64,000 bases of DNA from Setoptus koraiensis. Its lineage: Eukaryota; Animalia; Arthropoda. Below, in pieces: positions 20,201 through 27,667 of this stretch (position 1 is its first letter; each line of letters starts with the position of its first letter). The stretch spans positions 18,166,001-18,230,000 of the forward strand of contig CM106585.1 in the NCBI GenBank assembly GCA_048013815.1, written 5' to 3'. The notes beneath the pieces are model-generated. The model was not told the origin of the DNA. It searched no databases and saw nothing but the letters and a program-made list of their open reading frames with translations. The position numbers and the translations under genes are program-made.

Positions 20201-22262
20201 GATAGTCTAGTAAGTCTGTCTTGTCCTTCAATAGGAAATAATCGTGTATATTATAAGCTTTATTGCCTTAGTTGATGAAATTTATACAAGTCAAAGTTTA
20301 AGTCTCCAGTGTACGTATATTTTCTCTCTCTGTCTCTCCTCTCGAGAATCAACCACCACCTACTACTACCTGCGCAATCTTTGATAACCATTGATAACAG
20401 TATTAACAACAAGGCCGCTGTAGTTGAACACTAAGCGAAGATGACTCTCTAATGGATAGTTAGTGTTCACTTCAAGATGATGCAAGCGACTCTGCCATCA
20501 ATTTGCTTCAAGACGATGTGGACGACTGTCATGGGGGTTGGATGGAGGCTTCATTAACGACGGCGATTGTAGAGATCTAGAGAGAAAAGAGAAGATGGCC
20601 AGAAAAAATAGTTGCCTCCAGATTATATGGTTAACCATTGTCTCTGTTGCATGATGGCAAGTTGCTCTGTTTCTATTTCTGTTGTTGCCGTTATTGTTGT
20701 TGTTGCTGTTGCGTTTGTTGTCGATTTTGATCTTGTTGCTGTTGCAACTTAGAGCTAGTTACATACGTACACACAACAATAGTTGAGTGCTGAGTCTAAA
20801 GTGGCTGGTCAGTTTCGGATTCATCACCAGAGGGGGCAGCAAAGTTCATATCGCAGAGGTAACTGTAATGTAACGGCATCTAGCAGCGAGAACAACAAAA
20901 ACTAACTTACTTCAACAACTTGCGATAGGATGAACGTCATCACCGCTTGTCTGTCTTTTATCCCACCCTAAACTTTACTGTACTAGTCACTACCACTAGA
21001 CCATGCCGTCAAGCTGCCCCGTCCACCTTTGCTCCAGTGGGTATTTTGTGCATGTGTGAGTGTGTGCTTGTGTATGGAACAGCTATCCAGAGCTAGCTCG
21101 ATCAAACTGCTGCAACAATACAAGATCTGCCGTTGTTGCTGTCGTTGTTGTTGTTGCTGCTGCTGCTGATGCAATGGAAACAACAATAATGCAGCACAAT
21201 ATCAGTGCTGTGTAGTGGTCAATGGCATAGAAAAGGGTACACATTGCTGCTGAATTGAAATAATGCTGCAAAGAGAGGGGGCTCTAGTCGGAGAACAACA
21301 ACAGCGACAGCGACAACGACGACAACAACAACAAAAAAGAACCAAGGCGAAAAAATACTGGCCAGACTAATGAGAAAAGGGCTAGCTTAGCGACGCAATA
21401 GAGCAAGAGCTTGCAACAACAAGGACGACAACGGCGACAACGTTTGCAAAATCTGTCTTGACTTGATTTACTGGCAAAGTTGGTTGCTAAGATACACCTG
21501 CTGTTGTTGCTGCTTTGGCCGTTGCTGACGACGACGACGACAACATTGAGACAGAGAGCGGGTAGAGAATAGAATAATATTCGCGATAACGTTACGGTCA
21601 AGGTTTGTTGTTGTTGCTGTTGCTGTTGTTCTGTTGCCGAGAGAGCACTTTTGGTATACTTTTAGTATTCAACGAAACGGCAACAACGACAGTATTTCTC
21701 CAGAAAAATACAGTTAAATTTGTGCAAATCAAGCCACATCTAATCGAGTAGCAAGTGCCACGTTACAATCAGTCTGTACTGATAAATTTCTATAAATATC
21801 AATGGCTAATAATTAGCCATGATTGGTGTGCAGTCAAACCTATTTGCCGCTGTTAACCTAATGCCATAAGTGCACAGTGCAGTGTGATGGTGTTTGCACA
21901 GTTAGTTGTTGGTAGTGACATATCGTCGGTGATGGTGAGAATTTGCTTCAAAAACAATTGGTATAACGCCGAAAACAAATCGCAACATTTAATTTTAATA
22001 TATACAGATCAAGAGTAATGTCAAGCAGTCACTCATGAGTGCAGGTATTAGTAGTCAGTATAAACAAAATTATACACTTTTAAGTATTCGTTTACAAACA
22101 ACAACAACAACGACAGTCACCACGTACACCAGCCAATTATCAATTGGTCGCTGCCTTTAGCCGTAGTGCCACAGTATAGGGTCTCCCTTCGCACAATATA
22201 ATTCTCCCTTAGTATTGTGTTGTGCTTTTCTGTCGAATATTGACGGAGGAGAAATAGCACAA

Positions 22263-22545
22263 CGTACACACACACACACACACTCATACACACACACACA
22301 CTCACACACACACACACATACACACACACGGACATACACTGGAGCGCATACACACAGACACAGACACACACACACACACACACACACATACTCATACCAA
22401 TGGTGGCAAAGGTGGCGCAAATGAGAAGCAGTCTGGCAGCCCAGCACACATAAAAATTAAATTTGCCTTTAATGGTGAATACACACACACACACACACAC
22501 AGAAAAACACACACACACAAACACACAAACTCACTTACACATACA
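22263..22545. repeat. Interrupted (CA)n microsatellite cluster upstream of PLXDC
   Basis: Direct reading. It generates spurious HT/VC-repeat ORFs. Confidence 0.9.
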
Positions 22546-23263: not shown

Positions 23264-26139
23264 ATGATCATGAGTTCACATCATTATTTGGTCGTCACGA
23301 CGACCCTTCTGTTAATTTATGCAAATGGAAATGGTTGCACAAACGCAACTACCACAACTACCACCAACCAATTCGGATTATCATCATTAATCAGTAATAA
23401 TCAACAAACGAATCTCAATATAACCTCATCACCTTCGGCAAACTCACCCACGGCGGACATGTCATCCAACTCAAACTCATCCAGCAACAATAATGGAGAT
23501 CCAGATGATGAGATCATGACTGCCGAAAAGGGCCAAGAACCAACTAGCCCGAATGGAACTAAAGGAACGGAGGACACACATACATTCTACAAGCCAGAGT
23601 ATATCTCTAACAGCACGCGTGCCATGTCTTACTGGCTGGATTTCTCGAAATTAAATGTACAAAATTCGACTAAACACGAGATGCTGTCTAAATCACCCCC
23701 CCCCACCCCCCCCCACCCCACACACACCCCCCCCCACCCCCCCCACACCCCCCCCCCACCCCCCCAGACCCCCCCCCACCCCACCCCACCCACCCCCACC
23801 CACCACCCCCCCCCCACCCCCCCCACACCACCCACCCCACCCCACCCCCCCCCCACACCCCCCCCCCCCCCCACCCCCACCCCCCACCCCCCCCACCCCC
23901 CCCCACACCCCCCCCCACACCCCCCCACCCCCCCCCACACACACCCCCCCCACCCCCCCCCCCCCCCCCCCACACCCCCACACACCCCCCCCCACACCCC
24001 CCCCCACCCCACACACCCCCCCCACCCCCCCCCACCCCACCACCCCACCCCACCCCCCCACCCCCCACCCCACACCCCACCCCCACACCACCCCCCCACA
24101 CCCCCCCCACACCCCCCCCCACCCCCCCCCCCACCACCCCCCCCACCCCCCCCCCACCCCCCCACCCCCCCCCCACCCCCCCCCACCCCCCCACACCCCC
24201 CCCCCCCCCCCCCCACCCCCCACCCCACCCCCCCCCACCCCCCCCCCCCCCCCCCCCCCCCCCCACCCCCCCCCACCCCCCCACCCACCCCCCCACCCCC
24301 CCCACCCCCCCCCCACCACCCCCCCCACCCCACCCCACACCCCCCCCCCACCCCCCCCCACGCCCCCCACACCCCCCCACACCACCCCCCCCACCCCCCC
24401 TCCCCCCTCCCCCCACCCCCCCCCCACCCCCCCACACACCCCCCCCCCACCCCCCCCACCCCCCCCCCCCACCCACACACACCCCCCGCCCCCCCCCCAC
24501 ACCCCCCACACACCACCCCCACCCCCCCCCCACCCCCCCCCCCCCCCCCCACCCCCCCCACCCCCCCACCCACCCCCCCCCCACCACCCCCCCCCACCCC
24601 CCCCCCACCCCCCCCCTACCCCCCCCCACACCCCCACCACCCCACCCCCCACACCACCCCCCCCCCACCCCACCCCCCCCACACCCCACCCCCACCCCCC
24701 CCCCACCCCCCCCAGCCCCCCACCACCACCCCCCCACCACCCCCCCACACCCCACCCACCCCCCCCACCCCCACCCCACACACACCCCCACCACCCCCAC
24801 CCCACCCCCCCACCCCCCCCCCACCCCCCCCACCCCCACCACACACACCCCCCCCCCACCCCCACCCACACCCCCCCCCACCCCCCCCACCCCCCCACAC
24901 CCCCCACCCCACCCCCCCCCACCACCCACCCCCCCCCACCCACCCCACCCCCCACACCCCCCCACCCCCACCCCCCCCACCCCCCACCCCCACCCCACCC
25001 CCCCCCACCCCCCCCCACACACCCCCCCACACCCCCCCCCCACACACCCCCCACACCCCCACACCTCACATCGACGCGCCGCGCCAATTAAACTGACATT
25101 CGACTTTCCTTATTACGGACAACCATTGAGGAATATTATTATTGCAACCGGGGGGTTCTTGTACGTTGGCGAACATCTGCATCATTGGCTGGCCGCGACA
25201 CAAAATATCTCACCATTGATGGCCAATTTTGATTTGAGCACCAGCAATGATTCTGATATACATTACTATGACGATGGCAAATCACTGACGGTTCAATGGC
25301 AAAATGTTCAAATGAAAGATCACAAGCCAGAAGGAAATTTCTCGTTTCAAGTCACTCTCAACAAAACAGGAGATATTATTTTTGTCTATAAACATTTGCC
25401 CGTGACTATCGACAAGATACCAGAAGATGAGCATCCCGTTAAAGTAGGCATATCAGATGCATTCTTAGTTGACAAGGTGGTCTTCTTCATCAGGCGGAAA
25501 ACTATATACGATTACCATCGCATAAATCTCAAAGAAAATTTTGAAATAACAAATCAAACAGCAATAATACTTAAAGCTTTACCTACTTGCAATCAATATG
25601 ATTCATGTGAAACATGCTCAAAAGCTAATTCTACTTTGGGCTGCATTTGGTGTCCTACAGTCAACAGATGCTCGAACGGATATGACAGAAAAAGGCAAGA
25701 GTGGCTACAAAATCATTGCGATATCCTCAAGTCATCCGATTGCTCCGCTAAGGCTGAACCTTCAGCTTCTGTCAAAATTTCAGGTTCTCAGACACAAGGT
25801 AAGAGAACTTGCATACGTAATAGAATGCTTCCTTTCTTTCTGTTGTCACAATTCTAACCTTATTCTCGATTTACATTACTCATTTTTATTTTACTAGAAT
25901 CAGCTAACCAAAAGCTTGTTCGTGATATAGATACGGAGCCCCGTTCAGGCGATGGAAGTACAGCTTTTGCCTCACTCTTGATGCTTGTTGCATTAACTTC
26001 TGGTGTCGCTCTATGGGTATTCTATGCATACAAAAACCCACAAACTCCCTCTGGTCAACTACTAATTAAATATCGCCCCGGCAACTGGAGATGGCAAGCA
26101 ACCGAAACCCGTTATACTGCTGCATCCATTCATATGTGA
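23264..26139 (+). CDS. PLXDC: Plexin domain-containing protein (PLXDC1/2-type single-pass receptor), 467 aa once the C/A insert is removed; segments 23264-23696, 25070-25798, 25898-26139
   Basis: Signal peptide, then HEMLSKS|HRRAAPIKLTFDFPYYGQPLRNIIIATGGFLYVG...LMANFD...HPVKVGISDAF, a PSI domain (PTCNQYDSCETC...CIWC...RCSNGYDRKRQEW), a transmembrane helix and a YAYKNPQTPSGQLLIKYRP tail. Intron 25799-25897 is 99 nt, GTAAGA...CTAG. As assembled the gene is frameshifted by the insert. Confidence 0.9.
23697..25069. repeat. 1,373-bp irregular (CnA)m low-complexity tract interrupting PLXDC, flanked by a TCAC direct repeat
   Basis: Almost only C with isolated A, plus a handful of G/T; I found no AA dinucleotide. 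TCAC occurs at 23693-23696 and 25066-25069. Confidence 0.97.
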
Positions 26140-26977: not shown

Positions 26978-27667
26978 TTAACTTTTGCACCCAGATGCCC
27001 ATTCGTATGTTCCGTCTGAGAATAAAATCTTTTTCCATATAGCAACCTGGGTTTTAACGTTTTGGAGTATTTTCATTGTGACTGAATGAGAAAAGTGTCG
27101 ACTAGTCGAGCTGACGCATATGATGATAGCCTCTTGGCCGACACTCACTACGCCTAAACGAGCTCCCAAGTATATCTTAGCATTCTTATCTATGTTATTA
27201 TTTGCAGAGTCAAGAGATGATTCTAACATCCCATCTGCTTGAATGCTTGTTCCCTTGTCATGATGGTTCCTCAACATGACGGGAATATTTGCTTTCTTTT
27301 CGTTTTGCATGCAATTAGTATCTTGTCGAAAAAGTTGCATCTTGACAATGGCGATCAATTGTTTGAATGCAAGAGGGCAATAGGCCTCGTATTCCAGAGC
27401 AATAATGGGCGAATATGCTGGAGTAGTTGCAAGAGTACGACTCGTTCTGAGATCAGTATCCCTGACGGTTCCCGAGAAGGTGTTTATGGCGCCGCAACGA
27501 AGCGATTTAACAAAGTTGATACCGTCTAGAATGTTCAATGGTTGGTCGGTCAAGACTACCCTGAATGTATCGTGATCAAACTGATAATGTTTTTCTGATT
27601 GGTGATGTAACGCGGTAGCGTTGAGACCGGGGACAATTTTGTTGTCGCTGTCGTCGATAGAAGCCAT
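26978..27667 (-). CDS. MOCS2: Molybdopterin synthase catalytic subunit (MOCS2B/MoaE)-like, intronless, ~229 aa, divergent
   Basis: CGAINTFSGTVR, ALEYEAY, RLGVVSVGQEAIIICVSS and KTQVAIWKK align to the MoaE fold. First ATG is at 27667. Confidence 0.88.
   Translation of the reverse strand: MASIDDSDNKIVPGLNATALHHQSEKHYQFDHDTFRVVLTDQPLNILDGINFVKSLRCGAINTFSGTVRDTDLRTSRTLATTPAYSPIIALEYEAYCPLAFKQLIAIVKMQLFRQDTNCMQNEKKANIPVMLRNHHDKGTSIQADGMLESSLDSANNNIDKNAKIYLGARLGVVSVGQEAIIICVSSTSRHFSHSVTMKILQNVKTQVAIWKKILFSDGTYEWASGCKS

What the first reader, a model, noticed from the sequence alone, without database searches (positions are those of the whole stretch)
23693..25069. 1,373-bp CnA tract inserted cleanly into the PLXDC reading frame between TCAC direct repeats
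Seen: left flank ...ATG CTG TCT AAA TCAC, right flank TCAC ATC GAC GCG.... Removing 23697-25069 gives TCT AAA TCA CAT CGA CGC GCC = SKSHRRA, restoring the conserved LS.xHR.A...FDFPxYG region. The insert length is 2 mod 3 (frameshift), has no GT-AG ends on the sense strand, consists of C-runs separated by single A, and the downstream CDS has no stops. Inference, most likely first: (1) a long-read or gap-fill artefact; (2) a recent real insertion of untemplated or telomere-like (TG-run) DNA at a break with a 4-bp duplication, resembling the irregular C1-3A telomeres of yeast; (3) a non-canonical intervening sequence excised at RNA or DNA level through the direct repeats. If real it would be an extreme G-quadruplex/i-motif element and possibly a trace of the repair process behind intron turnover.
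Basis: partly seen in the sequence, partly recalled or inferred. Interest (0 to 1): 0.85.

Follow-up and report, generated by a model that had tools for sequence, protein, structure and literature searches.

The report
Probable junk-read insert in mite gene
A 1.4-kb stretch made almost only of C-runs and single A's splits an otherwise perfectly conserved mite membrane-protein gene; it is most likely junk from one noisy long read kept by the assembler, but the read-level test could not be run.

Summary
Window 23697-25069 is 1,373 nt (C 1150, A 215, G 4, T 4). It lies between two TCAC copies inside exon 1 of a plexin-domain-containing (PLXDC-like) gene of an eriophyoid mite. Removing it restores an intact 467-aa protein.

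A genomic contig of a related species (about 90% nt identity, same neighbouring gene) is uninterrupted and has the identical 17-nt junction. Both halves of the exon are under strong purifying selection (dN/dS 0.16 and 0.02). The tract is therefore very recent or not real.

Inside the tract, unit order is random. There are no internal repeats beyond shuffled controls and no AA (33 expected). C-run lengths are flat from 2 to 10 and then drop sharply (18 runs of 10, one of 11). It lacks the TT of eriophyoid T/G telomeres. No other such tract is in the window or in the scan's notes on this genome.

The genome fits Setoptus koraiensis. That assembly used noisy PacBio CLR reads, Flye, short-read polishing and a pool of more than 100,000 wild mites.

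Best reading (about 0.68): junk from one read, retained by the assembler.

The parts
23264..23696 (+). PLXDC-like gene, exon 1, 5' part (ATG, signal-peptide-like start, up to the left TCAC)
   Evidence: ORF and translation. It aligns to the N-terminal parts of eriophyoid homologues P0121, P0004, P0005 and P0122. dN/dS is 0.16 against L001.
23693..23696 (+). left copy of TCAC
   Evidence: The blastn match to L001 ends here.
23697..25069 (+). C-run/A tract, 1,373 nt; its last four bases are the right TCAC copy (25066-25069). On the minus strand it reads as T followed by G1-10.
   Evidence: Composition and run lengths. TRF finds no clean period. The tract is absent from the related species' contig L001.
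25070..25798 (+). PLXDC-like gene, exon 1, 3' part (conserved domain plus PSI domain)
   Evidence: Pfam PSI match, E = 4.5e-07. It is 98% identical to P0121 and 75-81% identical to many eriophyoid proteins. dN/dS is 0.02.
25799..25897 (+). canonical 99-nt GT-AG intron of the same gene
   Evidence: GTAAGAGA...TTTTACTAG. Splicing it out gives an open frame through to the conserved C-terminus.
25898..26139 (+). PLXDC-like gene, exon 2 (transmembrane segment, cytoplasmic tail, stop)
   Evidence: tblastn of P0004, P0122 and P0005 reaches 26136. The translation ends ...RYTAASIHM*.
26978..27667 (-). neighbouring MoaE/MOCS2B gene, used as a synteny anchor
   Evidence: Translation. The same gene follows the PLXDC exon on contig L001.

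Best explanation
The tract is not part of the mite's normal gene. Most likely one noisy long read carried a kilobase-scale burst of spurious C base calls with occasional A calls. The assembler took that read as the backbone of its draft contig. Consensus polishing and short-read polishing fix small errors, but they could not delete a 1.4-kb block that no other read shares. On this reading the real locus is ...TCTAAATCACATCGACG... without interruption and encodes an ordinary 467-aa PLXDC-like membrane protein.

Shown here: the anatomy of the tract, its random internal order, the intact and constrained gene on both sides, and the uninterrupted state in a related species.

Inferred: that the tract comes from a single read, and that the window belongs to the Setoptus koraiensis assembly.
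For: 1. The composition is essentially two letters. Unit order is random: lag 1-7 autocorrelations of run length lie between -0.09 and 0.10, and the longest internal repeat is 32 nt against 37 +/- 3.5 nt in unit-shuffled controls. TRF finds no clean period. This looks like a stochastic process, not a satellite grown by duplication.

2. It is unique. No comparable tract exists elsewhere in the 64 kb. Word searches of the scan's 1,687 notes on 536 windows of this genome found none.

3. It is not the lineage's telomere repeat. The tract has 0 AA (TT on the G-strand). Eriophyoid telomeres are TTTGG/TTTGGTGTTGG (PMC11879100), and this genome's are noted as TTGG-type (unchecked).

4. The gene is flawless apart from the tract. 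Against L001, dS is about 0.4, with dN/dS 0.16 upstream and 0.02 downstream.

5. Genomic contig L001 from a related species is about 90% identical downstream and carries the same MoaE neighbour. It has the junction uninterrupted, and the blastn matches stop at window 23696 and 25066.

6. The genome fits Setoptus koraiensis GCA_048013815.1 on five points.
   - The gene is eriophyoid, and the best named hit is a phytoptid.
   - The genome is in two pieces.
   - The piece holding this window is at least 21.7 Mb long.
   - Three runs come from one 2025 sample.

7. That assembly was made from PacBio Sequel II CLR reads with Flye 2.6 and one polishing round, then NextPolish with Illumina reads trimmed of homopolymers longer than 10 bp. 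The DNA came from more than 100,000 pooled wild mites (PMC11920263). A null allele of a constrained gene is unlikely to be the majority allele in such a pool.

8. C-run counts fall from 18 at length 10 to 1 at length 11. The threshold equals the paper's '>10 bp' trimming value and, from my memory only, a maximum homopolymer length of 10 in Flye's polisher. This suggests the letters were shaped by software.

9. Also from memory only: in Sequel II chemistry C is the brightest base signal and A the next, which would match C far above A, and A far above T and G, for a stuck bright signal.
Against: - No read-level test was possible.
- No same-species contig or protein could be found by other routes.
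- The TCAC duplication includes a T, and T is rare in the tract (4 in 1,373 nt). A simple burst of junk calls does not predict this. It looks like a target-site duplication or a microhomology join. I can only suggest that polishing at the tract's edge produced it.
- The total lack of AA and the flat 2-10 run-length distribution are not what independent base-calling noise would give.
- Eriophyoid telomeres are themselves irregular T/G-only DNA.
- Earlier notes report real break-repair scars in this genome (unchecked), so an unusual repair product is not absurd.
- The identification with S. koraiensis, the Flye limits and the dye-brightness order are inference or memory, not tool results.
Confidence: 0.68

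Rival explanations
1. The tract is a real, very recent germline insertion, polymorphic or fixed in the sampled population. About 1.37 kb of T(G1-10) DNA was made at a double-strand break, for example by an aberrant telomerase-like or other poorly templated polymerase. It was then sealed back into the chromosome with a 4-bp duplication, inactivating the PLXDC-like gene.
For: - TCAC is duplicated at both borders, with a T that is rare in the tract.
- There are strictly single A's and a bounded run length of 1-10, as a short template with slippage would give.
- Eriophyoid telomeres are irregular T/G-only repeats (note).
- Earlier notes describe real templated inserts and duplications in this genome (unchecked).
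Against: - The G-strand has no TT, so this is not the lineage's telomere unit.
- No second copy or source sequence is known.
- The insertion would knock out a gene with dN/dS 0.02-0.16 that shows no other defect.
- It would also have to be the major allele, or a lucky backbone read, in a pool of more than 100,000 mites.
- The sharp cut at run length 10 coincides with a threshold in the paper's read trimming.
Confidence: 0.2
2. A real but different sequence lies here, such as a long G/C-rich or homopolymer-like tract or a rare or somatic variant. Noisy reads and polishing rendered it badly, so something real exists but the printed letters are wrong.
For: - The cut-off at run length 10 suggests software shaped the letters.
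Against: It faces the same problems as the real-insertion reading: a knocked-out constrained gene and no counterpart elsewhere. A kilobase-scale homopolymer in an exon has no precedent that I know of.
Confidence: 0.07
3. The tract is a non-canonical intervening sequence, removed from the RNA or from somatic DNA through the TCAC direct repeats, so the gene still works.
For: - Precise removal between the TCAC copies restores the frame.
- Runs that look like RNA hold 0.92-0.99 of the sampled words of the stretch just downstream of the tract (25070-25860), so that part is probably expressed.
Against: - There are no GT-AG or AT-AC ends.
- The gene's own intron is a canonical 99-nt GT-AG intron.
- L001 and the other three close relatives read have no intron at this site.
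- The composition is unlike any known intron or eliminated-DNA class.
- The RNA junction was not observed.
Confidence: 0.03

Closest known systems
Retained single-read junk in noisy long-read assemblies (spurious-pulse insertion bursts in PacBio CLR reads; large backbone-specific insertions that consensus polishing does not remove)
   Same: The tract is a unique, kilobase-scale, two-letter, order-free block inside otherwise accurate sequence. The likely pipeline (CLR reads, Flye, short-read polishing) is of the kind where this can happen.
   Different: I could not show that only one read carries it. The TCAC duplication, the lack of AA and the flat 2-10 run-length distribution are not textbook features of such junk. 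I found no paper describing this exact C-run/A pattern.
Interstitial telomeric repeats inserted at double-strand breaks by telomerase (described in primates and rodents; named from my own knowledge)
   Same: A G-rich, T/G-only block lies inside unique DNA, with intact flanks and a few duplicated or microhomologous bases.
   Different: The unit is T followed by G1-10, never TT. Eriophyoid telomeres are TTTGG/TTGG-type (note). At 1.37 kb the tract is also far longer than typical inserted telomeric blocks.
Irregular telomeres made by template slippage (yeast TG1-3, Dictyostelium AG1-8; named from my own knowledge)
   Same: There are variable G-runs separated by one fixed base, with no higher-order periodicity.
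   Different: The run range is 1-10 with a flat distribution. The location is interstitial and inside an exon. The organism is a metazoan with a different telomere unit.
Spliceosomal intron
   Same: It interrupts an exon, and removing it restores the frame.
   Different: It has no splice-site dinucleotides and no counterpart in relatives. It is 14 times the length of the gene's real intron and has a two-letter composition.

Membership tests
Long-read sequencing or assembly artefact | Absent from most or all independent reads of the same sample | not testable with these tools
Long-read sequencing or assembly artefact | Unique block with no homologous copy or source elsewhere, and absent from relatives | tested here: met
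   There is no similar tract in the window or in the scan's notes on this genome. It is absent from the related species' contig L001.
Long-read sequencing or assembly artefact | The assembly was made with a method that can retain single-read blocks | tested here: inconclusive
   The candidate assembly used CLR reads, Flye 2.6 and NextPolish. That the window belongs to it is inferred, not shown.
Telomerase-made interstitial telomeric insertion | The repeat unit equals the species' telomere unit | tested here: not met
   The tract has 0 AA/TT dinucleotides. Eriophyoid telomeres are TTTGG/TTTGGTGTTGG, and this genome's are noted as TTGG-type (unchecked).
Telomerase-made interstitial telomeric insertion | Intact target site with only a few bases changed or duplicated | tested here: met
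   Only TCAC is duplicated, and the flanks are collinear with L001.
Spliceosomal intron | GT-AG (or AT-AC) termini and splice-site consensus on the sense strand | tested here: not met
   The tract starts CC and ends AC, or starts TC and ends CC if the borders are shifted by the TCAC repeat. The gene's true intron is GTAAGA...TACTAG, 99 nt.
Spliceosomal intron | The spliced junction is seen in RNA while the intron is present in DNA | not testable with these tools
Transposable element insertion | Target-site duplication | tested here: inconclusive
   There is a 4-bp TCAC on both sides. However, CAC is expected from the tract's own composition, so only the T is informative.
Transposable element insertion | Terminal repeats, coding capacity or other copies | tested here: not met
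   The composition is two letters, the only ORFs are low-complexity read-throughs, and there are no other copies.
PLXDC (plexin-domain-containing protein) gene, the host gene | PSI domain, the conserved N-terminal domain and the C-terminal transmembrane tail, with full-length similarity to named PLXDC1/2 | tested here: met
   Pfam PSI match, E = 4.5e-07. It is 75-81% identical to eriophyoid PLXDC1 and 52-59% to other arthropod PLXDC1/2. The rejoined product is 467 aa and ends YTAASIHM like its relatives.

The most novel reading that the evidence does not exclude
The tract is real germline DNA. A mite with irregular T/G-only telomeres would have healed an internal break by synthesising 1.37 kb of T(G1-10) repeats and re-joining the chromosome with a 4-bp duplication. 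This would leave an extreme G-quadruplex/i-motif block inside an exon and a fresh null allele of a conserved gene. It would be a direct trace of an unknown, poorly templated repair synthesis.
Probability: 0.2. Interest if true: 0.7.

Novelty: not a real feature. Interest (0 to 1): 0.15.

Why it matters
If the tract is an artefact, the matter is practical. The public assembly carries a false 1.4-kb block that breaks a conserved gene model. Automatic annotation would lose the PLXDC-like gene or split it, so the locus should be corrected. Other kilobase-scale two-letter blocks in this assembly should be screened in the same way.

If the tract were real, it would be an unusual case of kilobase-scale, near-untemplated G-run synthesis during break repair in an animal germline. 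It would also be one of the most extreme G-quadruplex-forming tracts known inside an exon.

Tried and rejected
- **Same-species contigs by protein search.** Three homologous-protein searches used the conserved domain with a long length range, the 242-aa piece, and the 100-aa N-terminal piece. They found only other species. The nearest, P0121/L001, is a related species at about 90% nt identity.
- **Exact-product look-ups.** The MoaE neighbour and the 610-aa tract-containing ORF are not on record.
- **Exact DNA patterns.** The left and right flanks found nothing in JGI metagenome contigs.
- **The repeat finder on the tract.** It gave only compositional self-matches and told me nothing.
- **Literature.** Searches for this junk pattern or for PacBio signal details found nothing usable. 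The Flye and dye-brightness arguments therefore rest on memory only.
- **Rejected: splice donor.** GTGAGG on the minus strand at the right border looks like a splice donor, but it is just the complement of CCTCAC, and the gene is on the plus strand.
- **Rejected: microsatellite expansion.** The neighbouring (CA)n arrays have a quite different composition.

Full report
**What is there**

Window 23697-25069 is a 1,373-nt block with C 1150, A 215, G 4 and T 4, in a window that is otherwise about 41% GC. TCAC stands at 23693-23696 and again at 25066-25069.

- The block consists of 220 C-runs, nearly all separated by a single A. AA never occurs, although 33 would be expected from composition.
- Run lengths are 1 (56 runs), then roughly flat from 2 to 10 (10-23 runs each). 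They then collapse: 18 runs of length 10, one of 11, one of 12, and five longer ones.
- The order of the units is random. Autocorrelations at lags 1-7 lie between -0.09 and 0.10. The longest internal repeat is 32 nt against 37 +/- 3.5 nt in unit-shuffled controls.
- TRF sees only period 1, or a loose period 11 with 78% matches and 9% indels.
- No other tract of this kind lies in the 64 kb.

**The gene it sits in**

The flanks belong to one gene on the plus strand.

- The downstream part has a Pfam PSI domain. It is 75-81% identical to many eriophyoid-mite proteins, including named PLXDC1 of Fragariocoptes setiger and Aceria tosichella. It is 52-59% identical to PLXDC1/2 of other arthropods.
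- The gene model is exon 1 at 23264-25798 (holding the tract), a canonical 99-nt GT-AG intron at 25799-25897, and exon 2 at 25898-26139.
- With 23697-25069 taken out, the gene encodes an intact 467-aa protein. It reads ...KHEMLSKSHRRAAPIKLTFDFPYYG... across the site and ends in the family's conserved YTAASIHM.
- With the tract left in, the frame runs through about 458 Pro/His/Thr codons to a stop at 25094.

**Relatives**

The nearest sequence I could reach is P0121, on a 3,994-bp genomic Logan contig (L001). That contig also carries the MoaE gene that follows PLXDC in the window.

- L001 is about 90% identical in DNA downstream of the site and about 71% upstream, so it comes from a related species.
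- Its exon is uninterrupted, and its junction TCTAAATCACATCGACG is identical to the window's two flanks joined.
- The two blastn matches stop at window 23696 and start at 25066, overlapping by the four bases TCAC.
- Against L001, dS is about 0.4, and dN/dS is 0.16 for the upstream piece and 0.02 for the downstream piece.

The gene has been under purifying selection for essentially all of its history and carries no other defect. The tract is therefore either extremely young or not real.

**Which genome and which method**

The following points all fit Setoptus koraiensis GCA_048013815.1:

- the eriophyoid affinity, with a phytoptid as the best named hit;
- two pieces, with this one at least 21.7 Mb long;
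- three runs from one 2025 sample and study.

That assembly used PacBio Sequel II CLR reads at about 496x, Flye 2.6 with one polishing round, and two rounds of NextPolish with Illumina reads trimmed of homopolymers longer than 10 bp. It was scaffolded with 3D-DNA, and the DNA came from more than 100,000 pooled wild mites (PMC11920263). This identification is an inference.

**Why I favour an artefact (about 0.68)**

A two-letter, order-free block with no known source and no second copy looks like a stochastic signal process rather than evolved DNA.

- It is not the lineage's telomere repeat. Eriophyoid telomeres are TTTGG/TTTGGTGTTGG-type (PMC11879100), and the scan's notes call this genome's TTGG-type (unchecked). 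The tract's G-strand has no TT at all.
- In a pool of more than 100,000 wild animals, the consensus should show the common allele. A null allele of a gene with dN/dS of 0.02 is unlikely to be common. Even a 'real' reading would need the assembler to have kept a minority molecule.
- The sharp cut in run length at exactly 10 coincides with the paper's '>10 bp' trimming threshold. From my memory only, Flye's polisher also has a maximum homopolymer length of 10. This suggests software shaped the letters.
- Also from memory only, C is the brightest and A the second-brightest signal in Sequel II chemistry. That order would match C far above A, and A far above T and G, for a stuck bright signal. PacBio's own read format also names 'burst' as a class of spurious pulses.

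The last two points are leads, not results.

**What speaks against it**

- The TCAC duplication includes a T, which is rare in the tract (4 in 1,373 nt). Simple junk does not predict it. It looks like a small target-site duplication or a microhomology join, and edge effects of polishing are only a guess.
- The complete lack of AA and the flat 2-10 distribution do not fit independent noise. They would fit synthesis from a short template with slippage.
- Earlier notes describe real break-repair scars in this genome (unchecked).

**What could not be done**

The decisive test is to lay reads on the locus, and it failed.

Attempts to reach same-species contigs by other routes all came back empty:

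- three protein searches;
- two exact-product look-ups;
- two metagenome DNA scans.

From the run search I can say only this. Several independent runs hold the downstream flank at 0.92-1.00 of sampled words. Some of them cover the stretch just downstream of the tract nearly fully (0.92-0.99) but the longer 2.5-kb stretch only at about 0.40, as RNA runs would. That does not show the junction.

**Verdict**

The telomere-healing reading is weakened by the absence of TT, and the intervening-sequence reading has no support. I give about 0.68 to a non-representative block derived from a single read and about 0.2 to a real recent insertion. The remainder goes to a mis-rendered real tract (0.07) or an excised element (0.03). 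Interest is low unless reads show the tract in many molecules.

Noticed in passing
window 22117-22542: A cluster of (CA)n/(TG)n microsatellite arrays lies about 0.7 kb upstream of the PLXDC start. The related species' contig L001 begins in the equivalent repeat, so short-read contigs probably break here.
   Followed up: partly
window 26978-27667 (-) and L001:3140-3814 (-): The MoaE/MOCS2B-like gene is tail-to-tail with PLXDC, and this arrangement is conserved in the related species. The two proteins differ mainly in the N-terminus and a central low-complexity insert.
   Followed up: partly
window 25799-25897: This 99-nt GT-AG intron is the only intron of the PLXDC-like gene. Exon 1 is about 1.16 kb without the tract, in line with the intron-poor, streamlined genomes reported for eriophyoid mites.
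   Followed up: partly
window 25060-25075, minus strand: Read on the minus strand, the right border is GTGAGGTGTGGGG, which resembles a splice donor. It is simply the complement of CCTCAC and is probably meaningless.
   Followed up: no
I did not examine it further or send it to any search tool.
   Followed up: no
window 7019 and 62207: The only homopolymers longer than 10 outside the tract are a C11 and a T12, so the assembly has no absolute cap at 10.
   Followed up: no
runs X10 and X11: Two runs of equal size (56 million letters) are filed under different organism labels (A and D) and hold the exon equally well (0.99). They may be one data set filed twice, or labels A and D may be the same species.
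   Followed up: no
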